Virus record (IMG/VR): IMGVR_UViG_3300029258_002750
Coordinates: 1 to 64,000 of that record
Direction: 5' to 3' (one strand)
DNA length: 64,000 nucleotides
Made by a program: the position numbers and the translations under genes. Under the pieces are notes generated by a model. That model saw nothing but the letters and a program-made list of their open reading frames with translations, did not search any database and was not told the DNA's origin. Shown here in pieces: positions 3,103 to 19,016 of this stretch. Position 1 is the first letter of the stretch, and the number at the start of each line of letters is the position of its first letter.

Positions 3103-4367
3103 GCGCGGCCCAGGCTCCCACAGTCGACGTCTCCTACGTGGTCTCGAAGGCGCGCACGAGGCTCGTCGCGCGCCTTCCCTTCCTGGGCCGGATTGCCATG
3201 AACATGGCGCCCCGGGCCGCGAAGCCCGAAGACGGCGTGAAGACGGCAGGGATCGCCCGGGACGGAACGGCGGTCTTCAGCGCTGAGTACCTCGCCACGC
3301 TCTCCGACAAGGAGATCGCGGGCGTGGTCGCTCACGAGGCGCTTCACCCGGCGCTCCAGTTCTGGGCGAGGAAGGGCAACCGGCACCACCTCCTCGCCAA
3401 CATCGCCCACGACCTCTCCTTCAACTTCTGGATCGAGGAGATGGCGTGCGGCGAGATCGAGCTGCCCAAGGGGTCTCTCCTCGATCCCAAGTTCCACGGG
3501 ATGTCGATGGAGGAGATCTACGCCTACCTCCTCAAGGGAGACAACGGCTCGGGCAAGACCACGATCAAGTGCAAGGGTGGTGGCCAGATCGTCGTGGACA
3601 CGAAGGGCGGCGGCGGCGACCAGTACGGCGACTGCCGAGACGACCTGGCCGAGTCGCCGGGCGGCAAGAAGGCGTCGCGCGGCGACCGCTCGGCACAGAA
3701 GAAGCTCGAGAGCGAGTGGAAGATGACGCTGGCCGAGGCCGCGCAGCACCACGAGCAGCGCTCGAAGAGCAAGGGCACGCTCCCGGCCGGGCTGCGCCGC
3801 TACATCGAAGAGCTGCTCCACCCGAAGCTCGACTGGACCGAGCTGCTCAGGAAGTGGTGCGGCGAGAACGGGCGGCGCGAAGACTACTCGTTCCTGCGGC
3901 CGAACCGCCGGTCCTACTCGCTGGGGACGATCCTCCCCTCGCAGTGCGCAGGCGGCTACGCTGATGTGGTCTTCCTGCTCGACTCGTCCGGTTCCATGAG
4001 CCAGCGAGAGATCCGGCGCGGCCTCTCGGAGGCGCAGGGGATTCTGGAGGAGATGGGCTGTGAGATCCGCGTGATCGTCTGCGACGCGGCCGTCCACACG
4101 GACATGAGCGTCGAGGAGGCGTGCGAGATCGAGGTGAAGGGCGGCGGCGGGTCGAACTTCTGCCCGGCGTTCGAGCTGCTCGACGAAGACGGGTTTGACG
4201 GCGCGGTCGTCGCCTTCACGGACGGCATGATCGACGTCCCGACCGAGATGCCCGTCAACATGCAGGGCTGCCTCTGGGTCACCACGGGCGACTACAGGCC
4301 GCCGACCGAGACGTGGGGCGAGCACATCTCGATCCCCGACGACAAGAACGACGAGGAGGAGTACTAG
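3099..4367 (+). CDS. DUF2201-type HExxH metallopeptidase-like + VWA domain protein
   Basis: AHEALH motif; DSSGSM MIDAS, GGGSNF, FTDG; typical partner of the upstream AAA ATPase. Confidence 0.85.
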   Translation: MSAAQAPTVDVSYVVSKARTRLVARLPFLGRIAMNMAPRAAKPEDGVKTAGIARDGTAVFSAEYLATLSDKEIAGVVAHEALHPALQFWARKGNRHHLLANIAHDLSFNFWIEEMACGEIELPKGSLLDPKFHGMSMEEIYAYLLKGDNGSGKTTIKCKGGGQIVVDTKGGGGDQYGDCRDDLAESPGGKKASRGDRSAQKKLESEWKMTLAEAAQHHEQRSKSKGTLPAGLRRYIEELLHPKLDWTELLRKWCGENGRREDYSFLRPNRRSYSLGTILPSQCAGGYADVVFLLDSSGSMSQREIRRGLSEAQGILEEMGCEIRVIVCDAAVHTDMSVEEACEIEVKGGGGSNFCPAFELLDEDGFDGAVVAFTDGMIDVPTEMPVNMQGCLWVTTGDYRPPTETWGEHISIPDDKNDEEEY

Positions 4368-8375: not shown

Positions 8376-8530
8376 CCCACGACGTAAGGGGCGGGGGACT
8401 TCATGGTGTTTCCACCTCTGGCGCGTCTACCATTCCGCCACCGACCACTGAGACGGCCGGGCGGGACTCGAACCCGCACGCTCTATCGAGCACCAGCTTG
8501 CAGGATGTAGTCTCCCAAGGCATTCGTGGG
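8376..8530 (-). ncRNA. YrlA-type Y RNA #1 (circularly permuted tRNA mimic)
   Basis: Order on minus strand: CCCACGA-ATG ... T arm GCGGG-TTCGAGT-CCCGC, acceptor stem closed by a loop (CCGGCCG-TCTCAG-TGGTCGG), D arm GCGGAATGGTAGACGC ... ACG-TCGTGGG closing stem; Ro60 gene in same island. Confidence 0.8.
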
Positions 8531-8540
8531 TTGTTCTAGT

Positions 8541-8610
8541 GGACCGACGTTGTGGGGTCAGCGAGACGAAACAGCTCCAAAAGATGTAGTCCCGCCGGAG
8601 CATTCGGTCC
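8541..8610 (-). ncRNA. short Y-like RNA
   Basis: GGACCGA-ATGC...GGACTACATC...ACAACG-TCGGTCC; same terminal module as the permuted tRNA mimics. Confidence 0.6.
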
Positions 8611-8641
8611 TATGACGACCGTGGGGCTTTCACCCACGGCC

Positions 8642-8771
8642 GCCGGATCGGCGACGCGAGAGCTTGCGTTCACGCCGCCGGGTTGCTGCGGCCCCTCTTG
8701 GCCCTGCCGAGTCCAGGTAACCACCAAGGGGCCTGCCATTCACTGATGTACTCCCGTCAAGTTCATCCGGC
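8642..8771 (-). ncRNA. structured RNA, divergent member of the Y-like family (rod with central bubble)
   Basis: GCCGGAT/ATCCGGC closing stem, GACGGGAG/CTCTCGCGTC, GGGAGTACATC motif, apical GGCCCC/GGGGCC stem. Confidence 0.45.
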
Positions 8772-8802
8772 TGCTGGCCGACGTTGTAGACGACGAGAGG
8801 GA

Positions 8803-8876
8803 TAGCGCGGGCAGGATTTGAACCTGCGATCTCCGGGTTATGAGCCCAGCGTCATACCGAACTAGACTACCGCGCG
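8803..8876 (-). tRNA. tRNA-fMet(CAT), canonical elbow
   Basis: C1/T72 mismatch, GGG/CCC anticodon stem, CTCATAA loop, D-loop GG, T-loop TTCAAAT. Confidence 0.9.
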
Positions 8877-8945
8877 TCGTTGTGCAGGGAGAACAGAGTC
8901 CCTTTGTCCTGGTCGAGCCAGGCTTACGCGACCTGCACCGCGATT

Positions 8946-9300
8946 TGGAGCTGGCGAGAATCGAACTCGCGTCCTGTAACCTATCCACCCGCGCGTCTAC
9001 GTGCGTAGCTCGCTCTCCTTAGTCCCCTCGTCTGAGCGCGAGCGTCTCTGGCGAGCGGGCGCCTCTAGGGAGTGTTCTCGTCCTTCACCGGGCGAGGCCC
9101 CGGATCAGGTACCAGCCCATCTTGTGGCCCAGACCTTTCACCCCATGGGCGGGGGATCCAGCTGGGGGCGGCCTTTTAGGCTGCCAGGCGAACAGGTGCG
9201 TTGGCAACTATTCAGTTTCCAGGTTGTTTATAGAGGCCAACCTGGGACCTCTACACGCAACGCGAGCTTCACCGGCCCAGTCGATACCAGTGTCAGCCCC
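8946..9300 (-). ncRNA. ssrA: tmRNA, tag peptide (A)ANAPVRLAA
   Basis: 5' GGGGCTGACACTGGTATCGAC, 3' GCGAG-TTCGATT-CTCGC-CAGCTCC-A, G3:U70; resume GCC at 9205, TAA at 9176-9178. Confidence 0.95.
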
Positions 9301-9315
9301 GTGTGTTCGTGCCCA

Positions 9316-9329
9316 AGTTGTCAAAGAGC
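9316..9329 (-). promoter_or_regulatory. boxA-like antitermination site GCTCTTTGACAACT in tmRNA leader
   Basis: Resembles rrn boxA; near-identical copy at 16687-16701 before the tRNA array. Confidence 0.5.
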
Positions 9330-9420
9330 GGAGGAACGGACCGGACGCTTCTCATAAGGGGGAAAGTGGGGATTCGATAGGCGCTACCCGGTCCGCTTCT
9401 CCTTCTCACTCGCTGTCTTG

Positions 9421-9429
9421 GTTATACCC
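9421..9429 (-). promoter_or_regulatory. promoter -10 motif GGGTATAAC upstream of tmRNA
   Basis: Variant of the recurring GGGTAGAAC motif. Confidence 0.55.
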
Positions 9430-9457
9430 TGCGGCCGACAGCCGCAAGGAAGTTTCA

Positions 9458-9529
9458 TGGGTCCGCAGGGATTCGCACCCTGACCGCCTCGGGTAAAAGC
9501 CGAGCGTGCTCCTGTTACACCACGAACCC
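9458..9529 (-). tRNA. tRNA-Lys(TTT), A18/G55
   Basis: CTCGG-CTTTTAC-CCGAG; T-loop TGCGAAT. Confidence 0.9.
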
Positions 9530-9530
9530 G

Positions 9531-9600
9531 TGGTACCCCCGCCCGGAGTCGCACCGGGGTCGCCGGGTTTAGAAGACCTGGCCGCCTCTCTGCCGGGGGC
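9531..9600 (-). tRNA. tRNA-Arg(TCT), reduced D arm, encoded CCA
   Basis: Loop CTTCTAA; T-loop TGCGACT; GCCCCCG/CGGGGGT-ACCA. Confidence 0.7.
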
Positions 9601-9603
9601 AAA

Positions 9604-9674
9604 AGCGGGCACCGGGAATTGCACCCGGGTCATCGGGATGGAAGCCCGACGCTCTACTTCTAAGCTATGCCCGC
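9604..9674 (-). tRNA. tRNA-Gly(TCC)
   Basis: TCGGG-CTTCCAT-CCCGA; T-loop TGCAATT; U73. Confidence 0.9.
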
Positions 9675-9678
9675 GAGA

Positions 9679-9750
9679 TGACCCCGGTGGGGATCGCACC
9701 CACACCTTCGGCGTGAAAGACCGACATCCAGACTACTAGACCACGGGGCC
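9679..9750 (-). tRNA. tRNA-Glu(TTC)
   Basis: TCGGT-CTTTCAC-GCCGA; T-loop TGCGATC. Confidence 0.9.
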
Positions 9751-9836
9751 AGGTGGCCGAGCGGGAGGGCTCGGCCGGGGGCGACCGGAAGACCGGACGC
9801 ACTCCACCATCACAGACTCGCTCGCGCGAGTTGCGA

Positions 9837-9908
9837 TGGGCACGGTGAGAATCGCACTCACGACCTCTGCTACGTCAAAGCAGCGCTCTTCTACTGAGCT
9901 ACGCGCCC
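9837..9908 (-). tRNA. tRNA-Val(GAC)
   Basis: CTGCT-TTGACGT-AGCAG; T-loop TGCGATT. Confidence 0.9.
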
Positions 9909-9994
9909 CGGCAACCGCCCGGTCCGTCAGGACCGTATTCCACCTTGGACGGATGGTGCATCCCTTCATCTAAACACGGGTCTAAGAGGCGGCA

Positions 9995-10076
9995 CGGAAG
10001 GCGGAGGAGTTGCACCCCATCCCGAAGGACCATCCGGTTTCAAGCCGGTACTCGGCGCTGGCCGAGATCGCCTTCC
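9995..10076 (-). tRNA. tRNA-Ser(TGA)
   Basis: Loop CTTGAAA, long variable arm, G73; T-loop TGCAACT. Confidence 0.85.
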
Positions 10077-10081
10077 AGACA

Positions 10082-10154
10082 TGGAGCCTACGGGACTCGC
10101 ACCCGTGCCCTCCGACCTGCCAGATCGGCGCTCTCCTAACTGAGCTAAGGCCCC
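10082..10154 (-). tRNA. tRNA-Ala(GGC)
   Basis: G3:U70; CCGAT-CTGGCAG-GTCGG; T-loop TGCGAGT. Confidence 0.9.
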
Positions 10155-10158
10155 TCGA

Positions 10159-10230
10159 TGGAGCAGAAGGGAATTGCACCCTCAACCTCGGCGTTGCGAA
10201 CGCCGCGCTCTCCTATTGAGCTACTGCCCC
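10159..10230 (-). tRNA. tRNA-Ala(CGC)
   Basis: G3:U70; CGGCG-TTCGCAA-CGCCG; T-loop TGCAATT. Confidence 0.9.
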
Positions 10231-10709
10231 GTGTGTTCGTGTTCTCCGCAGTCGCCGCAGTCGTGATCGCAGTGGGGACACTTGCCCTCCTCCGAGCACT
10301 CGCCGCAGACCGTGGTGACGGTCGTCATGTCCGGGTACTCCCTGAGCATCTTCTCGGCTAGCTGCCGGATGGGCAGCCCCGGAACACTCGGGTCCGGCTC
10401 GGCAGCCTTGCCGCAGACCGAACACTTCGTGTTCTCCAGGTGTTTGGCGAGCGCGTCGATCTTCGCTGCGTCGATCTTCGCGAAGGCATCGTGCTCGAAC
10501 TGGAGGACAGCGACCTGCCCGGTTGAGTAGTTCTCGGCGACCGGGTAGTCGGTGCCGCCGCGACCACATCGTGCGCAGGCGCGCATCATCATCGGATCGA
10601 GCGGTCGCTCCGGCTTGACCTCGGTCTGCGTGTGCTGCACGACCACGATCATCCGGCCGACGGATGGCGCGTCCTCACAGAACGCGCACCAGACGGGCTC
10701 ATCAACCAC
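10221..10709 (-). CDS. Cys-rich multi Zn-finger-like protein embedded in tRNA array
   Basis: GGAGG SD + GTG; six CxxC pairs; stop TAG is nt 8-10 of tRNA-Ala(CGC). Confidence 0.7.
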   Translation of the reverse strand: MVDEPVWCAFCEDAPSVGRMIVVVQHTQTEVKPERPLDPMMMRACARCGRGGTDYPVAENYSTGQVAVLQFEHDAFAKIDAAKIDALAKHLENTKCSVCGKAAEPDPSVPGLPIRQLAEKMLREYPDMTTVTTVCGECSEEGKCPHCDHDCGDCGEHEHTGQ

Positions 10710-10722
10710 TACGACCTCCGAA

Positions 10723-10778
10723 TCGGGCACCCGGGATTCGCACCCGGAGTCTCTCCTGATGAGATGAGAGAGACAACC
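10723..10778 (-). pseudogene. tRNA remnant (T arm + 3' acceptor strand only)
   Basis: CCGGG-TGCGAAT-CCCGG-GTGCCCG-A with no matching 5' strand or D arm. Confidence 0.5.
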
Positions 10779-10781
10779 CAA

Positions 10782-10852
10782 TCGGGGAACCCGGAGTTGC
10801 ACCGAGATTACACCGTCCCGAACGGCGCGTGTTGCTGTTACACCATTCCCCG
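10782..10852 (-). tRNA. tRNA-Pro(CGG)
   Basis: CGCCG-TTCGGGA-CGGTG; T-loop TGCAACT. Confidence 0.9.
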
Positions 10853-11458
10853 TAGTTCGTCGATGTCCCGAATCTCGTCCACGACCGCAGCCAACCGCGC
10901 CCGCCGCTTCGCGCCGAACACACCGCGCTTGTCGTTCACGAAGGCGATCTTCCGCCTCGGGTCATCTTGAATGTCCTCGAACCTGACGATCATGTCGTCG
11001 ATTCCTCGTCGGGCGTGCGTCGAGTGCTCGATGATCAGATCATCGTCTGCGAAGTCCACAGCGCGCTCCCCGATCCACTCCTTCCGAAAGGTGCGGCCGA
11101 AGAGGCGCTCTAGCTTCCGCTTCACCGGCAACTCGTCCTGCCGATACGCTAGGCCAGCTTGCTTGAGGTTCGCACGAGTCGCGGTGAGACAGCCCTCGCG
11201 GTTGTTCTCCCACGCGGCTCGACCGCCTTGCTTGCCCCACGCACGGCGCTGCGCTTTGGTTCCGGCGATCTGGCCGGATGTTGGCGACGGCCGACGCACC
11301 GTGATCGCTTCTCGCTGCTTGGCCGAGAGCTTGATGTCTCTGACCATGTAGCGAATCGTGCTCTTGCCAAGCTCAAGTTCCTCGGCAATCTCGGTGAGCG
11401 ACGCGCCGTCCCGTCGAAGGCGTCTCGCTCGATCGCGGATCTCTTTCGGGTAAGCCAT
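10838..11458 (-). CDS. HTH + DUF559/Vsr-like putative homing endonuclease
   Basis: N-terminal HTH (GASLTEIAEELELGKSTI); FRKEWIGERAVDF....IIEH nuclease-like core; own GGGTAAGAT-N6-ATG promoter. Confidence 0.6.
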   Translation of the reverse strand: MAYPKEIRDRARRLRRDGASLTEIAEELELGKSTIRYMVRDIKLSAKQREAITVRRPSPTSGQIAGTKAQRRAWGKQGGRAAWENNREGCLTATRANLKQAGLAYRQDELPVKRKLERLFGRTFRKEWIGERAVDFADDDLIIEHSTHARRGIDDMIVRFEDIQDDPRRKIAFVNDKRGVFGAKRRARLAAVVDEIRDIDELRGMV

Positions 11459-11470
11459 ACGAGCATCTTA

Positions 11471-11525
11471 CCCACGCGACCTCTGCGATTACAAGAGCGC
11501 GCTGACTAGACTGCGCTACAGTCCG
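11471..11525 (-). pseudogene. truncated tRNA-Pro-like 5' half
   Basis: CGGACTG-TA-GCGCAGTCTAGTCAGCGC followed by a distorted anticodon arm; T arm replaced by the promoter of the downstream nuclease gene. Confidence 0.55.
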
Positions 11526-11530
11526 TTGAA

Positions 11531-11615
11531 CGGAACGCGGAGGACTTGCACCCCAGACCTTTCGGCCCCAGCCGGGTTCGAGCCGGTGCCCGCGCGCTTG
11601 TCGGGTTCGCGTTCC
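11531..11615 (-). tRNA. tRNA-Ser(CGA)
   Basis: Loop CTCGAAC, long variable arm, G73; T-loop TGCAAGT. Confidence 0.85.
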
Positions 11616-11703
11616 TTGGAGCAGCGCGCCTGGCGTCTCACCAGGAGACGCCGAAGCGCCCAGGGATACCGTTGCCGTACGACCGGCTCCCACGCCTGCA
11701 AGA

Positions 11704-11772
11704 TCCCGCAGGAGAGGCTTGCACTCTCTTGCTCGTCCTTATGAGAGACGGCCCACTCTACGTGTCTGCGGG
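11704..11772 (-). tRNA. tRNA-Met/Ile2(CAT), elongator type, poor D arm
   Basis: CCCGCAG/CTGCGGG-A; CGTCT-CTCATAA-GGACG; T-loop TGCAAGC. Confidence 0.7.
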
Positions 11773-11776
11773 TTGA

Positions 11777-11847
11777 AGCCCTAGCCCGGAGTCGCACCGG
11801 GGTCTCCTCCGTACCAAGGAGGTGTTCTGCTCTTGGACCACTAGGGC
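11777..11847 (-). tRNA. tRNA-Thr(GGT)
   Basis: CCTCC-TTGGTAC-GGAGG; T-loop TGCGACT. Confidence 0.9.
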
Positions 11848-11851
11848 AAGA

Positions 11852-11925
11852 TCAGGGCGGTGGGATTCGCACCCACGGTCTCGTGTCCCCCAGACACGCG
11901 CCTTACTAGACTAGGCCACGCCCTG
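11852..11925 (-). tRNA. tRNA-Pro(GGG)
   Basis: CGTGT-CTGGGGG-ACACG; T-loop TGCGAAT. Confidence 0.9.
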
Positions 11926-11929
11926 TTGA

Positions 11930-12001
11930 TACTCGCGCCGGGAATCGCACCCGGATCTCCTCTTTCGGAGAGAGGTATCCTATCTTTTGGACGACGCGAG
12001 C
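11930..12001 (-). tRNA. tRNA-Arg(CCG)
   Basis: CCTCT-CTCCGAA-AGAGG; T-loop TGCGATT. Confidence 0.9.
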
Positions 12002-12002
12002 T

Positions 12003-12079
12003 TGGTACTCCCGGCAGGATTCGCACCTGCGAAGACCTCTTTAGGAGAGAGGCGCCTTAGTCTGCTCGGCCACGGGAGC
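12003..12079 (-). tRNA. tRNA-Arg(CCT), encoded CCA
   Basis: CCTCT-CTCCTAA-AGAGG; T-loop TGCGAAT. Confidence 0.9.
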
Positions 12080-12082
12080 GCA

Positions 12083-12154
12083 AGCCCCGACTCGGAGTTG
12101 CACCGAGTTCTCCTCCGTACGAAAGAGGCACATCACTCTTTATGCTTTCGGGGC
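12083..12154 (-). tRNA. tRNA-Thr(CGT)
   Basis: CCTCT-TTCGTAC-GGAGG; T-loop TGCAACT. Confidence 0.85.
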
Positions 12155-12246
12155 AGGATCGGGCATGTCCCAAGAGCACCCGGCCCCTAGAAGGCCGGAC
12201 TCATGGGCGTGCATCGCAGCGCCTAGAACGCCGTGAGTCCCGATCA

Positions 12247-12330
12247 CGGAGGAGGGGGGAGTCGCACCCCAACCTGACGGACCACCCGGATTCCAGCCGG
12301 GGCTCGGAGCTACTCCGAGTTCTCTCCTCC
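12247..12330 (-). tRNA. tRNA-Ser(GGA)
   Basis: CCCGG-CTGGAAT-CCGGG, long variable arm, G73; T-loop TGCGACT. Confidence 0.85.
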
Positions 12331-12356
12331 AGCAGAGCTGGGTCAGCGCAGACCTG

Positions 12357-12926
12357 CTACGCGACCCGCTCCTTCGCCAGGAACGGCTCCCAGCTCGCCA
12401 GGACCACACCGCGCGGGACCCGCAGGCCGGGCTTCCAGCTCGGGGCGGCAGGCTTCTTCCTGGGCCGCATCTTGGCTTCCTTCGGCATCTTGTCGGCCTT
12501 GCGCGCGTTGCAGCTCTCGCAGGCCGCGACGCAGTTCTCCCAGGTCGTCGGCCCGCCCTTGGAGCGGGGCGTGACGTGGTCGATCGTGAGCTTCCTCGGG
12601 GGAAGCTCGGCGCCGCAGTACTGGCAGGTGTGCTCATCGCGCCTGTAGAGGTTCGGCCGGTTGAAGCTGACCCTCTGTGGTGGCCGCTCGCCGTACTTCT
12701 TGCAGACGACCACCTCGGGGGCCGGGATCGGCTGGCCCGCCGTCTTGATCATCCGATCGGTGTCGGCGCGCTCGATCCACTCCTCGAGCGTCATCAGGTA
12801 GAAGCTCGTCGGGCACATGATCGAGGCCATGTCCCTCATCACGTTGCAGAGGGCGACCTTGATCGGCAGGAACGTGACCGGCTGCCAGTTCCTATTCAGC
12901 ACCAGGCAAGGTTCGTCGATGATCAC
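12357..12926 (-). CDS. HNH endonuclease (McrA/HNH_5-like)
   Basis: CLVLNRNWQP N-terminus; RDEHTCQYCG...LTIDHVTPRSKGG...WENCVAACESCNARK. Confidence 0.9.
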   Translation of the reverse strand: MIIDEPCLVLNRNWQPVTFLPIKVALCNVMRDMASIMCPTSFYLMTLEEWIERADTDRMIKTAGQPIPAPEVVVCKKYGERPPQRVSFNRPNLYRRDEHTCQYCGAELPPRKLTIDHVTPRSKGGPTTWENCVAACESCNARKADKMPKEAKMRPRKKPAAPSWKPGLRVPRGVVLASWEPFLAKERVA

Positions 12927-12938
12927 GGCTCTCTCCGA

Positions 12939-13012
12939 TCAGGGAGGCGGGAGTCGCACCCGCATGATGTCCTGGTCCCAAACCAGGCGGCTTACTGTTA
13001 GCCCACTCCCTG
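12939..13012 (-). tRNA. tRNA-Pro(TGG)
   Basis: CCTGG-TTTGGGA-CCAGG; T-loop TGCGACT. Confidence 0.9.
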
Positions 13013-13024
13013 GTGGCTGGTTGG

Positions 13025-13129
13025 TGGCACGCAGACGAGGACTCGAACCCCGCAAAGACCATCGGCCTGGGCCGTTTCCTACGATAACCCGGAGCACCCT
13101 TCCCTCCCTCTCCGTTCCGAGCTTCGCGT
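13025..13129 (-). ncRNA. 105-nt aberrant tRNA-like RNA with encoded CCA
   Basis: 3' CGGGG-TTCGAGT-CCTCG-TCTGCGT-G-CCA pairing partly with 5' ACGCGAA; no normal anticodon loop. Confidence 0.5.
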
Positions 13130-13187
13130 AGGACTCCACTCGACACTGAGTTCGCTCGTGGCGCTCTGCCGATCTGCGCACCGATGA

Positions 13188-13270
13188 CGGAAGGCGGGAG
13201 ACTCGCACTCCAACCCGAAGGACGCACGCCTTAGCAGGGCGGCCCGGCTCGCTTGTCCGGTTCACCTTCC
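13188..13270 (-). tRNA. tRNA-Ser(GCT)
   Basis: Loop CTGCTAA, long variable arm, G73; T-loop TGCGAGT. Confidence 0.85.
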
Positions 13271-13825
13271 AGTGGTCTTGGGGTAGCCGAAGCGATCGAA
13301 GTCGTCGCCCCACTTCTCGACTACCATCCGCTCGATCTCCGGCGTGTACTGGCTCTGCCAGTCGGCCGTGATCGGGCTCTGCGGGACGATGTGCAGCCGC
13401 TCGTTGGCGACGAACGGCAGCTCGCTGAAGCTCGCCTGGAGCTGTTCGTAGCGGATCAGCTGGGCGGGCTCGATCTCTCCCAGCCGAGCTGACTGGGACT
13501 CGAAGCCGGACCCTGCGGTCCTCTCAACGAAGGCCCCGAAGTCGTCCGGCCTCGCGCGGACGAACTCGCCCAGCTCGTTGGGCCACCGGGACACCCAGTT
13601 CCAGCAGGAGACCATTCTGCTGAATGGGTTCCTCACGGTCGCGATCACGAGGTAGCTCTCGCACCCGGTCGGGATCCCGATCCGATGCGTGAGCATCCGA
13701 CCGTCCTGCTCGCCGCCGATGCAGCCGAACCTGTCGCGCAGCGTGTGGAACACGCAGCGGGTGCCGGTCCGCATGTTGGCGAGGAAGACGAAACGGTGCG
13801 CGTGCGAGACGTTCATCTCGCGCAT
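13262..13825 (-). CDS. sulfotransferase family 2-like protein
   Basis: FVFLANMRTGT (5'-PSB loop), ATVRNPFSRMVS (3'-PB), IRYEQL, DFDRFGY. Confidence 0.75.
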   Translation of the reverse strand: MREMNVSHAHRFVFLANMRTGTRCVFHTLRDRFGCIGGEQDGRMLTHRIGIPTGCESYLVIATVRNPFSRMVSCWNWVSRWPNELGEFVRARPDDFGAFVERTAGSGFESQSARLGEIEPAQLIRYEQLQASFSELPFVANERLHIVPQSPITADWQSQYTPEIERMVVEKWGDDFDRFGYPKTTGR

Positions 13826-13832
13826 CGTCGCA

Positions 13833-13906
13833 TAGGGCCACTGGGACTTGCACCCAGCGCCTCCGGCATATCAGACCGGCGCTCTACCTGCATGAGCTAT
13901 GACCCT
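13833..13906 (-). tRNA. tRNA-Ile(GAT)
   Basis: CCGGT-CTGATAT-GCCGG; T-loop TGCAAGT. Confidence 0.9.
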
Positions 13907-13910
13907 GTGA

Positions 13911-13983
13911 TGGTCCCGGTCGGATTTGCACCGACAACCTCTTGGCCCTCGACCAAGCGCCTCTGCTGTTGGGCTACGAGACC
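13911..13983 (-). tRNA. tRNA-Leu(GAG), short variable loop
   Basis: CTTGG-TCGAGGG-CCAAG (C33); D arm GCCCAACAGCAGAGGC; T-loop TGCAAAT. Confidence 0.85.
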
Positions 13984-13987
13984 GGAC

Positions 13988-14052
13988 GCTCGACGTTGTT
14001 GGTGCCGCAGACGTGCATGTGTTCAGGATGTAGTCCACGACGGCATTCGAGC
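13988..14052 (-). ncRNA. short Y-like RNA
   Basis: GCTCGA-ATGCC...GGACTACATC...ACAACG-TCGAGC. Confidence 0.6.
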
Positions 14053-14055
14053 TGA

Positions 14056-14128
14056 TGATCCTGGTCGGATTTGCACCGACAACCTCCGCATCCTGAGTGC
14101 GGCGCCTCTGCTGTTGGGCTACAGGATC
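14056..14128 (-). tRNA. tRNA-Leu(CAG), short variable loop
   Basis: CCGCA-CTCAGGA-TGCGG; T-loop TGCAAAT. Confidence 0.9.
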
Positions 14129-14131
14129 GTA

Positions 14132-14203
14132 TGTCCCGGGAGGGATTTGCACCCTCAACTCTGGTGTTTGAGACCAGCGGCGTTGCTATTAGCCTACCGG
14201 GAC
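14132..14203 (-). tRNA. tRNA-Leu(CAA), short variable loop
   Basis: CTGGT-CTCAAAC-ACCAG; T-loop TGCAAAT. Confidence 0.9.
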
Positions 14204-14224
14204 TCTTCCGATGTTCTTTCCGCA

Positions 14225-14301
14225 GAACGTCGGTGTCTGACTGTTGCAGTTGGGGCAGAGGAAGCACCAGACCAGTGCCTCTGCTGTTGGGCTAGCGGAG
14301 C
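14225..14301 (-). pseudogene. degenerate tRNA (Leu-type 5' half)
   Basis: GCTCCGC-TA-GCCCAACAGCAGAGGC intact; anticodon and T arms decayed. Confidence 0.5.
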
Positions 14302-14378
14302 TGGTAGGGCGCCTGGGAATCGCACCCAGCTTGGAAAGGGTTATAAGCACCTCCGCGACACCTAGCCGCCCGCGCCCC
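14302..14378 (-). tRNA. tRNA-Ile(TAT), encoded CCA
   Basis: GGGGCGC/GCGCCCT-ACCA; loop CTTATAA on a bulged stem; T-loop TGCGATT. Confidence 0.75.
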
Positions 14379-14381
14379 TCA

Positions 14382-14455
14382 TGCCCCCGGTGGGAGTTGC
14401 ACCCACAATCTCTCGGTCCGTAGCCGAGCGCCTTAGTCTGTTTGGCCACGGGGGT
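14382..14455 (-). tRNA. tRNA-Arg(ACG)
   Basis: CTCGG-CTACGGA-CCGAG; T-loop TGCAACT. Confidence 0.9.
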
Positions 14456-14459
14456 TGGA

Positions 14460-14531
14460 TACCCGGACTGCGAGTCGCACGCAGAACTCGAGGTCCACAA
14501 CCTCGCGTGATCACTGTTTCACCATCCGAGC
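14460..14531 (-). tRNA. tRNA-His(GTG), no G-1, A73
   Basis: CGAGG-TTGTGGA-CCTCG; T-loop TGCGACT. Confidence 0.85.
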
Positions 14532-14535
14532 TGGA

Positions 14536-14606
14536 AGCGGCCTGCGGGAGTTGCACCCGCGCGAAGAGCTTGGGAAGCTCTCATGCTGCTGCTACATCAA
14601 GGCCGC
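14536..14606 (-). tRNA. tRNA-Gly(CCC)
   Basis: AGAGC-TTCCCAA-GCTCT; T-loop TGCAACT. Confidence 0.9.
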
Positions 14607-14671
14607 GTGCGCCGGATACCCAGGGGGGCTCCCCAGGCCAGCCGGTCCTTGCCGTGCTGCTTGCGATCCGA

Positions 14672-14754
14672 TCCGCCTGCGTGGATTCGCACCACGTTGC
14701 TCCGAAGAGACCCGGGTTACAGCCGGGCACGACCACTAGGTCGACCCCAGACGG
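14672..14754 (-). tRNA. tRNA-Tyr(GTA), long variable arm, C1:G72
   Basis: CCGTCTG/CAGGCGG-A; CCCGG-CTGTAAC-CCGGG; T-loop TGCGAAT. Confidence 0.85.
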
Positions 14755-14758
14755 TTGA

Positions 14759-14829
14759 AGCGGCCTACGAGAATCGCACTCGTGACTACAGCATGGCAAG
14801 CTGTCGCGTTACTACTACGCCAAGGCCGC
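14759..14829 (-). tRNA. tRNA-Gly(GCC)
   Basis: ACAGC-TTGCCAT-GCTGT; T-loop TGCGATT. Confidence 0.9.
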
Positions 14830-14838
14830 GTTGTAAGG

Positions 14839-15017
14839 GGCTCTCGCTGGGAATTGAACCCAGATCCTCCACACCACGATCGCTTCATAGCCGACCGAAG
14901 CCATCCACGGTCGCGCGGTCTGTGCGGCGTGCTTGCCATCCGACGAGCGTCAGAAACCGGGGCTGCTCGGCCCGGCACTGCGGTAGCTCGTGGACGACCC
15001 CATACACCATCGAGAGC
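14839..15017 (-). ncRNA. about 180-nt tRNA-like RNA with large internal domain
   Basis: Perfect 7-bp acceptor GCTCTCG/CGAGAGC and T arm CTGGG-TTCAATT-CCCAG enclosing about 140 nt of hairpins. Confidence 0.55.
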
Positions 15018-15028
15018 ATGTGTTCAGC

Positions 15029-15099
15029 TGGGCCATGAGGGAGTCGCACCCCCGCCTTCTCGGTGTGAACGAGATGCGCTTCTGTTACACCAATGGCCC
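15029..15099 (-). tRNA. tRNA-Val(CAC)
   Basis: TCTCG-TTCACAC-CGAGA; T-loop TGCGACT. Confidence 0.9.
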
Positions 15100-15104
15100 G
15101 GGTT

Positions 15105-15233
15105 CCGACGACGTGAAGGCGACGAGAGGGTTATCTAGCCACCACGGCCCTCTCCACGAAAGCGGAGAGACTGGGAGTCGAACCCAGATCGATCGAGTTA
15201 CAGTCGATGTACTCCCATCAGGGCATTCGTCGG
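15105..15233 (-). ncRNA. YrlA-type Y RNA #2 (circularly permuted tRNA mimic)
   Basis: CCGACGA-ATG...GATGGGAG; hairpin ATCGA-CTGTAAC-TCGAT; T arm CTGGG-TTCGACT-CCCAG; looped acceptor TCTCTCC-GCTTTCGT-GGAGAGG; CTCTCGTC...ACG-TCGTCGG. Confidence 0.8.
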
Positions 15234-15234
15234 A

Positions 15235-15306
15235 TGGAGTAGGTGGGAGTTGCACCCACGACCCTCGGTTTGCAGGACCGACGCTCTCCTACTGAGCTAC
15301 TACCCC
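15235..15306 (-). tRNA. tRNA-Ala(TGC)
   Basis: G3:U70; TCGGT-CCTGCAA-ACCGA; T-loop TGCAACT. Confidence 0.9.
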
Positions 15307-15310
15307 AAGA

Positions 15311-15382
15311 CGGCCCCCGTGGGATTCGCACCCACAACCTCACGGTCCAAAGCCGCGCGCTCTGCTGTTGAGCTAGGGGGCT
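15311..15382 (-). tRNA. tRNA-Gln(TTG)
   Basis: CGCGG-CTTTGGA-CCGTG; G73; T-loop TGCGAAT. Confidence 0.9.
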
Positions 15383-15624
15383 AGGTTCTTCTCGCGCTCG
15401 CGCGCTCGAATGATCGCAAGCTCGACCTTGCGCTCGCGGGCGGTCTTCTTCCCGCGCTTCTTCGCCAGGCACGTGTAGCAGTGCCTCGGCGGTTGGTGGC
15501 CGCTCCGCGCGGCCCGTTCGATGTGCTTCAGCTTGATCGGCCGATCGCACGCCCTGCATCGTCGGCCGCTCTCTTCAGCGAAGTGCGGCCAGTGGTAGTC
15601 CTTCTCTCGCTTGTTGGTGGCGAT
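15373..15624 (-). CDS. small basic CxxC/CxxC protein with apparent ATC start
   Basis: AGGAGG-act-ATC then ATNKREKDYHWPHF..CRAC..CYTC..; 83 aa; absent from ORF track because of its start codon. Confidence 0.55.
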   Translation of the reverse strand: MATNKREKDYHWPHFAEESGRRCRACDRPIKLKHIERAARSGHQPPRHCYTCLAKKRGKKTARERKVELAIIRAREREKNLAP

Positions 15625-15643
15625 AGTCCTCCTGGCTGGCGGA

Positions 15644-15716
15644 TAGCGTCGCCCGGATTCGAATCGGGATCCTCACAGGTTATGAGCCTGGCGAGCTACC
15701 GTTGCTCTACGACGCG
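15644..15716 (-). tRNA. tRNA-fMet-like(CAT) #2, canonical elbow
   Basis: C1/T72 mismatch, GAGC/GCTC D stem with GG, T-loop TTCGAAT. Confidence 0.85.
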
Positions 15717-15717
15717 A

Positions 15718-15791
15718 CGGCCCCCCTGGGATTTGCACCCAGAAACCTCCGGTTCCAGAGACCGGCGCTCTACTGATTGAGCTAGGGGGCT
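15718..15791 (-). tRNA. tRNA-Gln(CTG)
   Basis: CCGGT-CTCTGGA-ACCGG; T-loop TGCAAAT. Confidence 0.9.
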
Positions 15792-15795
15792 AGGC

Positions 15796-15860
15796 GCCCG
15801 ACGTTGGTGGTTGCCGTGTCGAGCACATGTTGGAGATGTAGACACAGCTGGCATTCGGAC
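15796..15860 (-). ncRNA. short Y-like RNA
   Basis: GTCCGA-ATGCC...CTACATC...CCAACG-TCGGGC. Confidence 0.6.
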
Positions 15861-15862
15861 GA

Positions 15863-15934
15863 CAGGCCGCCTGGGAATCGCACCCAGCAGACGGCAGGTT
15901 TTGGAGACCCGCCCGCGTACCTAGCGCGCGACCT
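15863..15934 (-). tRNA. tRNA-Trp(CCA)
   Basis: Loop CTCCAAA, G73; T-loop TGCGATT. Confidence 0.85.
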
Positions 15935-15937
15935 AGA

Positions 15938-16460: not shown

Positions 16461-16465
16461 AGGTT

Positions 16466-16603
16466 GACGTCCGAGTGAGGGAACCGCGAGTAGGTGCTCT
16501 TCCACTTGAGCTAGTTCGCCCCGAGTGGCGAACCCTGGAGTCGAACCAGGAACATCCCGCTGATGAAGCGAAAGTGCGTGTAGGATTCTCTCGGCCGGAC
16601 GCC
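16466..16603 (-). ncRNA. YrlA-type Y RNA #3 (circularly permuted tRNA mimic)
   Basis: GGCGTCCG/CGGACGTC closing stem; T arm CCTGG-TTCGACT-CCAGG; looped acceptor GTTCGCC-ACTCGG-GGCGAAC; D arm GCTCAAGTGGAAGAGC. Confidence 0.8.
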
Positions 16604-17339: not shown

Positions 17340-19016
17340 TTACGCCTCCGGCTGCTCGAGGCTAATCGCCTCGATCTCTGCGACCCAGGCGTCCACGTCG
17401 TGCGTGTCGCCCCGGGCGAACCGATCGACCGTGCTCCAGATCGCGTCCGAGAACCCGCCGATGTTGAGGATCTCGTCGGGCGCGCTCGGCGCCTGGGTGG
17501 TCGTGTTCGGCGAGATGTCGATGCAGACCATCCGCGCCCCGCCCGCCTTCTTATGGAGCTGGCGGAACTCGGACATGAGCTGGGTCCCTCGCCCGTAGCG
17601 CAGGCTCCCGCGCGAGTCGACCCACGACTCGTTGTCGCTGACGATGACCACGAGCTTGAACTCGTGCGCCCTCTTCAGGCCGTTCAGGTGACGGAGGGCC
17701 AGCGAGAGGTTGGTCCCGCCGCCGCCCATCTGACCCAGCTTGATGGCGTTCGTCATGACCGTGTCGCGGGGGTTGATGAGCCGCGTGCTGTGGACGCTGG
17801 TGTCCACGGGAATCGCGATCGAGCCCTTGTTCCGCCGAAGCACGGTGGCCGCCATGAGACCAGCCACATCCACGCAGCGGACCTTGGTCGTCGAGCCCTT
17901 CCGCACGCCCGTGACCGGGCTGTGCATCGAGCCGCTGACGTCCACGATCACGGCCGTGGGCACACCGAAGCTGGGGACACTCTCGGTCGCGACCTCCATC
18001 GCGTCCTGAAGGGAGTCCCTGACCTCGAAGGGCAGGTCGATGGGCTCCGGCGCGCCGCTCTCCATCGCGTAGCGACGGTAGTACTGCGCGTACCGCTCGT
18101 AGATCGGGTCTGGGTGCTTGCCCGAGTTCAGGTACGCGACGAGCAGCTGGTAGGGGAAGACCCGGGCCTTCGCCAGCTCCTCGCGGTCGGCGATCCGAGC
18201 TGCGACCAGCTCGGCAATGCCGGGCTCGTCGAAGACGCTGTGGCGCGCTGCCGTGTTGAGGTTCTTGATTGTGAACTGGTAGCCGCCGTTGCGGACGATC
18301 TGCGCCCAGTGGTGCGGCTTGAGGGGCAGCGAGGTGAGCTGCCGGAAGTCGACGTCAGGGACCTCGGCCGACTCGCCGCGCTTGAACGCCTCGTAGTGCT
18401 GGACGATGCCGGGGAGCTTCGCCGCGTCGTGCTCGCGACCGAGGATGTAGCCGATGAGGGCCTTCTGCTCCTCGTCGACCGCCTTCGGGTGGGCGAGCCG
18501 GATGACGTCGGCCAGGCTCGGGTTCTTCCCAACCGTCGCGCGGAAGAGCGCGCGGGCCGACCGCTGCCGGATCCACTTGTTGACGAGCCGCTTGAGGCCC
18601 GACCCCATCGACTTCCGGCCGAGGACGCCGGACCGGACCATCTGGACCAGGTTGCGGACCATCTTGCCGTTGTCGATGACGCGGGTGAAGACCAGGTCGC
18701 ACAGGCGCGGGTCGGCCTTCGACAGCATGACCATAAGAGCCGCAGGCATGTCCTTCATCCCGCCCTTCTGGCGCGCGTAGACCGCGCACTTGGCGAGGAA
18801 GACGGGCTCGACCTGGTCGGCCGCCTGGCGAATGCCCTCGAGCTGGTCGACGGGGGAGGTGTAGTAGGTCGGGTTGAACGTGCCGGTGCACGCCAGCTGC
18901 GCGAGCGCGTGCTTCGGCCCAAACTGGTAGGCCGTGCCTCCGGCCTTGTTCGTGGTGTCGGTTGCGGGAACCGAGCGCCCTGCGGACGCACTCTGGAAGA
19001 CGGCCTTGTTCGCCAC
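17340..19016 (-). CDS. Ro60/TROVE-domain RNA-binding protein (Rsr-like)
   Basis: N.AGG.AY...PKHALAQLACTGTF..TYY; SLADVIRLAHPK; ARVFPYQLLVAY; VWA DVSGSM, GGGTNLS, IVSDNESW; LNIGGFSD. Confidence 0.95.
   Translation of the reverse strand: MANKAVFQSASAGRSVPATDTTNKAGGTAYQFGPKHALAQLACTGTFNPTYYTSPVDQLEGIRQAADQVEPVFLAKCAVYARQKGGMKDMPAALMVMLSKADPRLCDLVFTRVIDNGKMVRNLVQMVRSGVLGRKSMGSGLKRLVNKWIRQRSARALFRATVGKNPSLADVIRLAHPKAVDEEQKALIGYILGREHDAAKLPGIVQHYEAFKRGESAEVPDVDFRQLTSLPLKPHHWAQIVRNGGYQFTIKNLNTAARHSVFDEPGIAELVAARIADREELAKARVFPYQLLVAYLNSGKHPDPIYERYAQYYRRYAMESGAPEPIDLPFEVRDSLQDAMEVATESVPSFGVPTAVIVDVSGSMHSPVTGVRKGSTTKVRCVDVAGLMAATVLRRNKGSIAIPVDTSVHSTRLINPRDTVMTNAIKLGQMGGGGTNLSLALRHLNGLKRAHEFKLVVIVSDNESWVDSRGSLRYGRGTQLMSEFRQLHKKAGGARMVCIDISPNTTTQAPSAPDEILNIGGFSDAIWSTVDRFARGDTHDVDAWVAEIEAISLEQPEA

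What the first reader, a model, noticed from the sequence alone, without database searches (positions are those of the whole stretch)
8541..15860. Family of short 65-70 nt Y-like RNAs with covarying terminal stem
Seen: three spacers (8541-8610, 13988-14052, 15796-15860) share 5'-[stem]CGA-AUGC-N-CUACAUC-N27-29-(A/C)CAACG-UCG[stem]-3'. The flanking stems differ in sequence yet all pair: GGACCGA/UCGGUCC, GCUCGA/UCGAGC, GUCCGA/UCGGGC. YrlA-like #1 and #2 carry the same CGAAUG...ACGUCG ends (CCCACGA/UCGUGGG, CCGACGA/UCGUCGG). Inference: this is the Ro60-binding module, giving at least 5-6 Y RNAs per Ro60, some without any tRNA domain. CGAAUG resembles the GNCGAAN(0-1)G motif I recall for bacterial Y RNAs.
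Basis: partly seen in the sequence, partly recalled or inferred. Interest (0 to 1): 0.75.

Follow-up and report, generated by a model that had tools for sequence, protein, structure and literature searches.

The report
Short Y RNAs in phage tRNA array
A 275-kb phage that encodes the RNA-binding protein Ro60 also carries, in slots between its tRNA genes, three short hairpin RNAs and at least three longer tRNA-like ones that share the Ro60-docking motif of bacterial Y RNAs: a good new example of a known kind, not a new kind.

Summary
On the minus strand, 8541-8610, 13988-14052 and 15796-15860 share the order stem, GAAUGC, second stem, UACAUC loop, ACG, UCG-stem. Two longer tRNA-like elements (8376-8530, 15104-15234) have the same ends. 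The printed Rfam consensus of YrlA and YrlB shows the same module, although Rfam's models do not reach threshold here. A covariance model built only from phage copies finds exactly these three sites in the 275-kb genome. It also finds 23 sites in related Ro60 phages and 35 sites beside Ro60 genes of diverse bacteria, every one on the Ro60 strand. About 97-99% of modelled pairs hold, and 12-13 of 14 pairs show changes on both sides. Ro60 binding and RNA accumulation could not be tested, because no RNA run was listed and the complex job was not folded. Two of the three shorts sit between tRNAs with 1-4 nt spacers, which suggests release by tRNA-processing enzymes. Phage Ro60 binding short phage Y-like hairpins was shown experimentally in 2025, so this is a new member of a known kind.

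The parts
17340..19016 (-). Ro60 (TROVE plus Ro60-type vWA) gene, 558 aa, at the head of the tRNA/Y RNA array
   Evidence: Pfam TROVE 36.5 bits and vWA_Ro60 36.3 bits, both over their cut-offs. It is the only TROVE match in the 275-kb genome. It is 85% identical to the Ro60 of contig IMGVR_UViG_3300017971_000201, and 43% (tblastn) to 48% (protein alignment) identical to that of Myxococcus phage Mx1.
16462..16603 (-). Y3: long YrlA-like RNA with a tRNA-like core and diverged terminal module (CCGA-GA-GAAUC-CUACAC ... GGUUC-CCUCAC-UCGG); fills the slot between tRNA-Phe and tRNA-Asp
   Evidence: Rfam YrlA RF02553 gives 29.4 bits over model positions 24-84, below the gathering score of 69. No ortholog was found in the closest relative.
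15863..15935 (-). tRNA-Trp(CCA)-like gene immediately 5' of S3 (about 2 nt spacer); missed by ARAGORN in the window
   Evidence: The sequence and fold are. ARAGORN calls the ortholog in L002 tRNA-Trp at 13051-13125.
15796..15860 (-). S3: short (65 nt) YrlB-type Y RNA. Order: stem 1 GUCCGA/UCGGGC, AUGC-CA, stem 2 GCUGUGUC/GACACGGC, a 20-nt UACAUC loop, then a 3' internal loop ending CAACG
   Evidence: Model R3 scores 64.9 bits, E 1e-13. The ortholog in L002/L125 is only 78% identical yet keeps both stems, including one U-A to A-U swap. tRNA-Gln (15716-15792) starts 3 nt downstream.
15104..15234 (-). Y2: long YrlA-like RNA (131 nt) with the same terminal module (CCGACGA-AUGC ... GAUGGGAG-UACAUC ... 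CUCUCGUC ... ACG-UCGUCGG) around a T-arm-like insert; lies between tRNA-Ala and tRNA-Val
   Evidence: Found by the regex scans. Model R3 scores 26 bits across the large insert. No ortholog was found in the closest relative.
13988..14052 (-). S2: short (65 nt) YrlB-type Y RNA between tRNA-Leu(CAG) 14056-14128 and tRNA-Leu(GAG) 13911-13983, with spacers of 3 and 4 nt
   Evidence: Model R3 scores 69.6 bits, E 4e-15. The ortholog in L002 is at 15125-15188.
8746..8799 (-). Hairpin-closed ('permuted') copy of the module directly 3' of tRNA-Met (8803-8876). Order: stem-2 3' strand CUCUCGUC, ..ACAACG, stem 1 closed by a loop, AUGAAC, stem-2 5' strand GACGGGAG, UACAU
   Evidence: The fold is (z -1.98). 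In the L124 ortholog the closing hairpin is kept through changes (UCGGCC-GGC-GGCCGA against UCGGC-CAGCA-GCCGG), while the alternative pairing with downstream sequence is broken. It was found only in these two related genomes. This reading is tentative.
8541..8610 (-). S1: short (70 nt) YrlB-type Y RNA. Order: stem 1 GGACCGA/UCGGUCC, AUGC-UC(C), stem 2 (C)GGCGGGAC/GUCUCGCU(G), UACAUC loop. Its 5' half is close to the Rfam YrlB consensus
   Evidence: Model R3 scores 56.9 bits, E 1e-11. The ortholog at L124 7481-7550 is 94% identical.
8376..8530 (-). Y1: long YrlA-like RNA (155 nt), the last element of the array, with the module CCCACGA-AUGC ... UACAUC ... ACG-UCGUGGG around a tRNA-like core
   Evidence: Found. 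Rfam YrlA aligns partially, 19.4 bits, to the T-arm and D-arm region. The ortholog at L124 7561-7715 is 91% identical.

Best explanation
The three 65-70 nt elements are small non-coding Y RNAs of the YrlB type and partners of the phage's own Ro60. Each folds into one long interrupted hairpin. A terminal stem formed by the 5' and 3' ends closes with G-A paired to U-C. Next comes an asymmetric internal loop, with AUGC on the 5' side and a run ending (C/U)G on the 3' side. Then follow a second 8-9 bp stem and an apical loop that starts UACAUC. The terminal stem plus internal loop is the Ro60-docking module. The three long elements carry the same module around a tRNA-like effector domain (YrlA type). 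The following steps are inferred. The RNAs are probably transcribed with the tRNAs as one long minus-strand transcript that begins at or upstream of Ro60. They are then cut out by the enzymes that mature the neighbouring tRNAs: RNase P at the next tRNA's 5' end, and 3'-end processing of the preceding tRNA. S2 and S3 sit in tRNA-sized slots with 1-4 nt spacers, which fits this route. Once bound to the outer face of the Ro60 ring, the short forms lack an effector domain, so they most likely gate or compete for Ro60. The long forms would tether Ro60 to a host factor such as PNPase, which the phage does not encode. Together they would tune RNA surveillance or decay during infection.
For: Sequence: five copies share GAAUGC, UACAUC and ACGUCG, and their stems differ in sequence yet pair. 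The pattern gives 3 hits against 0 in 100 shuffles.

Homology to known Y RNAs: the Rfam consensus lines of YrlA and YrlB show the same order of GaAUGC, stem, (C/U)UAC(AUC), stem, UUGuCg. An element in relative L140 is matched full-length both by Rfam YrlB (25.5 bits) and by my model (53.8 bits).

Specificity: model R3 finds only S1-S3 in the whole 275-kb genome.

Synteny: there are 23 hits at E<1e-4 in 8 related Ro60 phage contigs, the window included, and 35 hits at E<0.1 in 29 bacterial Ro60 loci. All are on the Ro60 strand, and in the bacteria most lie 20-900 nt past the Ro60 stop.

Covariation: in the phage set 99.1% of cells pair, 13 of 14 pairs change on both sides, and slid controls give 28-55%. 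In the bacterial set, which was not used for training, 96.9% pair and 12 of 14 pairs change on both sides.

Ortholog test: S3 and its ortholog are 78% identical and keep both stems.

Context for processing: the spacers to flanking tRNAs are 1-4 nt, and no minus-strand terminator-like site lies in the array. The same slot arrangement occurs in L129, whose Ro60 is 52% identical.

Published precedent: D. radiodurans Yrn2 is made as a polycistronic precursor with a tRNA and Yrn1. [quoted passage not shown] Thermus phage phiLo Ro60 binds a roughly 60-nt single-hairpin phage RNA through its CGAA stem-bulge with a KD of about 17 nM, and forms a ternary complex with host PNPase (PMC12135203).

The phage has no PNPase, RtcB or CCA-adding enzyme match.
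Against: There is no direct evidence that the RNAs accumulate or that this Ro60 binds them. No RNA sequencing run was listed for this metagenomic phage, and the complex prediction was not folded. Rfam's curated YrlB model does not detect S1-S3 at all, and YrlA reaches only 19-29 bits on the long forms. Folding energies are only weakly better than shuffles. The covariation alignments were fitted to the model's structure, which favours pairing. S1 and Y1 lie 8.7-8.8 kb from Ro60, beyond the 4-kb rule used in the literature. The gate/tether division of labour and the processing route are inferences.
Confidence: 0.85

Rival explanations
1. The elements are processing or spacer signals of the polycistronic tRNA transcript, for example recognition hairpins for an endonuclease, and not Ro60 partners.
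For: S2 and S3 sit exactly between tRNAs with 1-4 nt spacers, and no expression or binding data exist.
Against: The same module occurs immediately beside Ro60 in bacterial loci that hold 0-1 tRNA. It also occurs next to Ro60, outside any tRNA array, in phages L130, L131 and L147. Only 3 of about 40 tRNA junctions in the window carry it. The one bacterial locus with a tRNA array (L163) gave no hit.
Confidence: 0.03
2. The short elements are decayed remnants of YrlA-type genes that lost the tRNA-like insert. They are carried along without a function of their own.
For: The short and long forms share the module and differ mainly by the insert. Y RNA content varies between close relatives, since Y2 and Y3 have no ortholog in the nearest contig.
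Against: Short forms are found across phages and at least five bacterial phyla, with compensatory changes in both stems and a conserved UACAUC loop start. All three window copies have orthologs in the nearest relative, one at 78% identity with its structure kept. Short second Y RNAs are bound by Rsr in Salmonella and M. smegmatis (PMC4201824).
Confidence: 0.07
3. The RNAs are real and structured, but their main partner is something other than Ro60, such as host PNPase or a tRNA-modifying or tRNA-repair factor. On this view their closeness to Ro60 reflects a shared pathway only.
For: Thermus phage Yrl RNAs bind PNPase on their own (PMC12135203). The invariant UACAUC lies in the apical part, not in the presumed Ro60 site.
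Against: The most conserved part (GAAUGC opposite ..G-UC, closing the terminal stem) coincides with the motif that Ro60/Rsr protects or requires in Xenopus, Deinococcus and phiLo RNAs. The co-occurrence with Ro60 is strict in strand and distance.
Confidence: 0.05

Closest known systems
YrlB of Salmonella enterica (Rfam RF02565), the short second Y RNA bound by Rsr
   Same: It has one interrupted hairpin of 65-78 nt in the same order of parts: terminal stem ending ..cGA, AUGC, a second stem ending GGA(U/C), a UACAUC loop start, and a 3' internal loop ending UUGUCg. It has no tRNA-like domain. It is encoded on the Ro60 strand.
   Different: The window copies do not score with the Rfam model. Their 3' internal loop ends CAACG rather than UUUG. 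There are three paralogs rather than one. They sit in tRNA slots of a phage array rather than in an rsr-yrlBA-rtcBA operon, and the phage has no RtcB.
Yrl2 of Thermus phage phiLo (PMC12135203)
   Same: It is a phage-encoded single hairpin of about 60 nt with a CGAA motif in a stem-bulge-stem. It is encoded beside a phage Ro60 together with a second Y-like RNA. That phage, like this one, lacks its own PNPase.
   Different: Its binding to Ro60 and host PNPase was shown experimentally, whereas nothing was tested here. The phiLo RNAs lie upstream of Ro60 and, in the passages read, are not described as lying in a tRNA array. Their sequence could not be compared because it was not available to the tools.
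YrlA (Rfam RF02553), the tRNA-like Y RNA reported in 254 bacteria and 22 phages (PMC4201824)
   Same: It has the same Ro60-docking module. The long elements Y1-Y3 of the window also have T-arm-like and D-arm-like cores that align to the model.
   Different: The short elements lack the tRNA-like domain entirely. The long ones score only 19-29 bits against a gathering score of 69.
Yrn2 of Deinococcus radiodurans and YrlB of Mycobacterium smegmatis
   Same: [quoted passage not shown] Yrn2 is made as a polycistronic precursor with a tRNA (PMC4201824).
   Different: The Deinococcus module resembles the metazoan bulged helix on both strands.

Membership tests
Y RNA (Ro60-associated non-coding RNA) | Physically bound by Ro60/Rsr | not testable with these tools
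   The complex prediction job was not folded and gives no evidence either way. No pull-down data exist for this metagenomic phage.
Y RNA (Ro60-associated non-coding RNA) | Encoded near Ro60 on the same strand (Chen et al. 2014 used 4 kb) | tested here: met
   All copies are on the Ro60 strand. S3 lies 1.5 kb and S2 3.3 kb from the Ro60 stop. S1 and Y1 lie 8.7-8.8 kb away but in the same uninterrupted tRNA array. Every homolog found, in 8 phage contigs (window included) and in the bacterial Ro60 loci, is on the Ro60 strand.
Y RNA (Ro60-associated non-coding RNA) | Long stem formed by pairing of the 5' and 3' ends that carries the conserved Ro60 site | tested here: met
   The terminal helix pairs in 98.6% of cells and 5 of its 6 pairs change on both sides. 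The result is the same in the independent bacterial set.
Y RNA (Ro60-associated non-coding RNA) | GNCGAAN0-1G motif near the 5' end | tested here: inconclusive
   CGAAUG is present in all five window copies, but the leading G-N is present only in Y2. Across relatives only GAAUGC is invariant.
Y RNA (Ro60-associated non-coding RNA) | Accumulates as a discrete small RNA | not testable with these tools
   Only DNA metagenome runs hold the sequence, and no RNA run was listed.
Rfam YrlB (RF02565) | Score at or above the gathering score (97 bits) | tested here: not met
   There was no match at E<=10 in the region, in a 266-nt sub-search, or in the whole genome. The relative's element in L140 reaches 25.5 bits full-length.
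Rfam YrlB (RF02565) | Consensus architecture: terminal stem, AUGC, second stem, UACAUC, short apical helix, UUGUCG | tested here: met
   A side-by-side reading of the printed consensus against the aligned family shows the same order of parts. A possible ACAU/AUGU apical helix appears in many members, including S3.
Rfam YrlA (RF02553), for the long elements only | Score at or above the gathering score (69 bits), with a tRNA-like T-arm and D-arm core | tested here: not met
   The scores are 29.4 bits (Y3) and 19.4 bits (Y1), and Y2 is not listed. The partial alignments cover the T-arm and D-arm positions. The short elements have no such core.

The most novel reading that the evidence does not exclude
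The phage keeps a diversified set of Y RNAs: three short, three tRNA-like, and one docking module fused to the 3' end of a real tRNA-Met. On this reading they act as interchangeable adaptors that direct one Ro60 ring, with host PNPase, to different RNA classes. The phage would thereby police or protect its own 40-gene tRNA pool against host anticodon nucleases. The tRNA-Met fusion would be the first case of a genuine tRNA carrying a Ro60-docking module.
Probability: 0.1. Interest if true: 0.75.

Novelty: new member of a known kind. Interest (0 to 1): 0.42.

Why it matters
Y RNAs beside phage Ro60 genes have been known since 2014, and binding of short phage Y-like hairpins to a phage Ro60 was shown in 2025, so the kind is established. 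This case adds three things. First, it is a clear example in which one Ro60 is served by six or seven Y RNAs that occupy tRNA slots in a jumbo-phage tRNA array. That points to release by tRNA-processing enzymes. Second, the short YrlB-type form, which BLAST in 2014 found only in Salmonella enterica, turns up beside Ro60 in many bacterial phyla and phages once a structure-aware model is used. Third, current Rfam models miss these RNAs. In the cultured relative Myxococcus phage Mx1, one of them is annotated as a hypothetical protein. Mx1 and Myxococcus xanthus could be a tractable system for asking what phage Ro60 particles do.

Tried and rejected
- Rfam at gathering and at E-value thresholds gave no YrlB hit and only partial YrlA hits.
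- Megablast of the array against 50,697 phage records found only a 47-nt tRNA match.
- A loose 14-base pattern scan of IMG/VR returned mostly chance hits. A stricter 20-base pattern returned the one close relative plus four matches without flanking stems, which I rejected as chance.
- The first covariance model was built on a MAFFT alignment that put stem 2 out of register. It was replaced by a model seeded from S2 and its ortholog, then rebuilt on 13 sequences.
- A sequencing-run search listed only DNA metagenomes, from sediment and seawater, and no RNA run.
- The Ro60-RNA complex prediction was not folded.
- Apical-loop complementarity to other transcripts of the window was no better than shuffles, so there is no support for a guide role.
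- The region 8611-8802 read as an ordinary long Y RNA was rejected, because the required terminal pairing is broken in the ortholog.
- RtcB, CCA-adding enzyme and PNPase domains are absent from the phage genome.
- The promoter and terminator scans were uninformative beyond showing no minus-strand terminator-like site in the array.

Full report
**Setting.** The window is the first 64 kb of a 275,101-bp virus record with direct terminal repeats. Everything relevant lies on the minus strand.
- A 558-aa Ro60 gene sits at 17340-19016. TROVE and Ro60-type vWA domains both score over Pfam's cut-offs, and it is the only TROVE match in the genome.
- About 9 kb of RNA genes follow. ARAGORN lists 35 tRNAs there, a tmRNA lies at 8943-9300, and several further tRNA-like genes are found only by Rfam or by eye.
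- A few small ORFs lie between the RNA genes, one of them an HNH endonuclease.
- The nearest named phage by Ro60 is Myxococcus phage Mx1, at 43% (tblastn) to 48% (alignment) identity. One metagenomic contig, IMGVR_UViG_3300017971_000201, is much closer, with 85% Ro60 identity.
- The DNA is held by sediment and seawater metagenomes.

**The observation.** A 20-base pattern made of the shared blocks hits the three short elements and nothing else in the window. It hits nothing in 100 shuffles. The 8-9 nt before UACAUC pair with a stretch about 20 nt downstream in every copy, again with different sequences.

The common architecture, 5' to 3', is:
- stem 1, closing with GA paired to UC;
- AUGC plus 1-3 nt;
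- stem 2, usually ending GGAC or GUGUC;
- an apical part starting UACAUC;
- the 3' strand of stem 2;
- a 10-12 nt single-stranded run ending ACG;
- the 3' strand of stem 1.

In the long elements the apical part is a tRNA-like insert of about 90-110 nt.

**What it corresponds to.** Rfam holds both YrlA (RF02553) and YrlB (RF02565). Neither reaches threshold in the window. YrlA gives partial matches of 19-29 bits to the tRNA-like cores, and YrlB gives nothing. In a related phage contig (L140), both models align full-length just past the Ro60 stop. The printed consensus lines there show the same module as the window elements:
- For YrlA: cggCgaAUGC, a stem, aCUAc, the tRNA-like core, then cUuGucGccg.
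- For YrlB: cgcGaAUGCU, the stem gGcCgGGAU, UACAUc, a short apical helix, the returning stem, then AUUUGuCgcg.

The 5' half of S1 (CGAAUGCUCCGGCGGGACUACAUCUUU) is close to that YrlB consensus. The short elements are therefore YrlB-type in architecture, and the long ones YrlA-type.

**Relatives and statistics.** I collected 20 phage loci encoding Ro60 relatives at 32-85% identity, plus Mx1 and 29 bacterial Ro60 loci at 39-53% identity. A covariance model seeded from S2 and its ortholog, then rebuilt on 13 phage sequences (R3), gave the following results:
- *Own genome:* only S1, S2 and S3 (57-70 bits) in the whole 275-kb genome.
- *Phage set:* 23 hits at E<1e-4, all on the Ro60 strand, in 8 phage contigs, the window included.
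- *Bacterial set, not used in training:* 35 hits at E<0.1, all on the Ro60 strand. Most lie 20-900 nt past the Ro60 stop. Nineteen are short (58-80 nt), fifteen are long (92-135 nt), and one further hit is cut off at a contig end.

The bacterial loci come from Planctomycetota, Acidobacteriota, Verrucomicrobiota, Alphaproteobacteria, Actinomycetota and others. The usual order, Ro60 then short then long, is that of the Salmonella rsr-yrlB-yrlA operon.

Pair counts:

| Set | Cells paired | Pairs changed on both sides | Slid controls paired | Shuffles reaching the observed covariation score |
|---|---|---|---|---|
| Phage | 99.1% | 13 of 14 | 28-55% | 0 of 500 |
| Bacterial | 96.9% | 12 of 14 | 30-73% | 0 of 500 |

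These alignments were fitted to the model, which favours pairing. Two observations do not depend on that fitting. The bacterial set was independent of the training set. Also, S3 and its ortholog are 78% identical and still keep both stems. Across all members the invariant letters are GAAUGC, the G-G before (A/U)(C/U)UACAU, and G-U-C at the start of the 3' strand of stem 1. Folding energy alone is unremarkable, with z-scores of -0.75 to -1.8.

**Rival readings.**
- *Processing signal of the tRNA transcript.* This fails because most bacterial loci with the element hold 0-1 tRNA. Several phages also carry it directly beside Ro60 and outside any array.
- *Dead remnants of YrlA genes.* This is unlikely given the wide conservation with compensatory change, and the published binding of short second Y RNAs by Rsr.
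- *A partner other than Ro60.* This cannot be excluded for the apical UACAUC part. However, the best-conserved part coincides with the motif that Ro60 contacts or needs in Xenopus, Deinococcus and Thermus phage RNAs.

**Mechanism, with its status.** The architecture, the family relationship and the strict linkage to Ro60 are shown. The rest is inferred.
- *Co-transcription with the tRNAs.* All genes share one strand and no minus-strand terminator-like site lies in the array.
- *Excision by tRNA-processing enzymes.* S2 and S3 are separated from the flanking tRNAs by 1-4 nt. Y2 and Y3 abut tRNAs on both sides. The same slot arrangement recurs in L129. Deinococcus Yrn2 is made as a precursor with a tRNA.
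- *Docking on Ro60 through stem 1 and the internal loop.* This is by analogy with solved and probed complexes.
- *Division of labour.* Short forms would gate or compete for Ro60, and long forms would tether it to a host factor. The phage encodes no PNPase, RtcB or CCA-adding enzyme. Any effector would therefore be a host protein, as with Thermus phage phiLo, whose Ro60 and two Y-like RNAs bind host PNPase and damp its activity.

**Number of Y RNAs.** The window holds three short forms (S1-S3) and three long forms (Y1, Y2, and Y3 with diverged ends). It also holds a hairpin-closed copy of the module right after tRNA-Met at 8746-8799. In that copy stem 1 is capped by a loop and stem 2 is open. 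The closest relative keeps the capped hairpin through sequence changes, and the alternative ordinary pairing is broken there. Because this reading rests on two related genomes, it stays tentative. Y RNA content is fluid: the closest relative has orthologs of Y1, S1, S2, S3 and the capped copy, but not of Y2 or Y3. Other phages of the clade also carry several copies, for example L129 with at least six, L141 with five and L140 with four.

**Novelty.** YrlA-type RNAs near phage Ro60 genes were reported in 2014 for 22 phages. Binding of two phage Y-like RNAs, one a single hairpin of about 60 nt, to a phage Ro60 was shown in 2025. The finding is thus a new member of a known kind. Two points may be new in the papers I could search: the placement of several Y RNAs in tRNA slots of a jumbo-phage array, and the breadth of the short YrlB-type form. 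In 2014, BLAST found the short form only in Salmonella enterica. I could not read the 2018 and 2020 reviews of bacterial Y RNAs, so this may already be noted there.

**Limits.** There is no expression or binding evidence. Only loci already fetched could be searched with the model.

Noticed in passing
window 8746-8799 (-), with tRNA-Met 8803-8876 (-); ortholog L124 7297-7349: A copy of the Ro60-docking module lies directly 3' of a real tRNA-Met and is arranged as a closed hairpin: stem 1 is capped by a loop and stem 2 is open. The capped hairpin is kept through sequence changes in the closest relative. The alternative pairing with downstream sequence is broken there. It was found only in these two genomes.
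   Followed up: partly
window about 16462-16603 (-): A third YrlA-like element gives the best Rfam YrlA hit in the genome (29.4 bits) but has a diverged terminal module (GA-GAAUC-CUACAC instead of AUGC..stem..UACAUC). It fills the slot between tRNA-Phe and tRNA-Asp. In the closest relative those two tRNAs are adjacent and the element is absent, as is Y2.
   Followed up: partly
window about 9995-10076, 11530-11615, 12235-12322, 13190-13270, 14300-14375, 15863-15935 (all -): Several tRNA-like genes were missed by ARAGORN. Four are class-II, Ser-like tRNAs with long variable arms (anticodon loops reading UGA, CGA, GGA and GCU). One is Ile(UAU)-like and ends in CCA. One is Trp(CCA)-like. The array therefore holds more than the 37 tRNAs listed.
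   Followed up: partly
L122 (Myxococcus phage Mx1, OR576727) 3608-3709, overlapping annotated CDS WNM70101.1 at 3610-3732: A YrlA-type RNA with GAAUGC..UACAUC ends and a T-arm (model R3, 32.5 bits) lies where the record annotates a 40-aa hypothetical protein. This is probably a mis-annotated RNA gene in a cultured phage.
   Followed up: no
L160-L188 (bacterial Ro60 loci): Short YrlB-type hairpins of 58-80 nt lie just past the Ro60 stop, usually followed by a YrlA-type RNA. They occur in Planctomycetota, Acidobacteriota, Verrucomicrobiota, Rhizobium, Rhodobacteraceae and others. This is much wider than the Salmonella-only range reported for YrlB in 2014.
   Followed up: partly
L002 20950-21668: In the closest relative, an ORF of about 600 nt is inserted after the tmRNA. 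It is followed by a second copy of the tmRNA 3' end (GGGGTTCGATTCCC..CAGCTCCA). This looks like a mobile insertion with a duplicated target, and it is absent from the window.
   Followed up: no
window 8943-9300 (-) and 12357-12926 (-): The phage encodes a tmRNA with the tag ANAPVRLAA (126.8 bits). An HNH endonuclease ORF (Pfam HNH, 58 bits) sits inside the tRNA array.
   Followed up: no
window 9301-9457, 9752-9836, 14830-15028 (all -): Further GC-rich structured spacers in the array remain unexplained. The one at 14830-15028 ends with a T-arm-like hairpin (CUGGGUUCAAUUCCCAG) but has no GAAUGC module.
   Followed up: no
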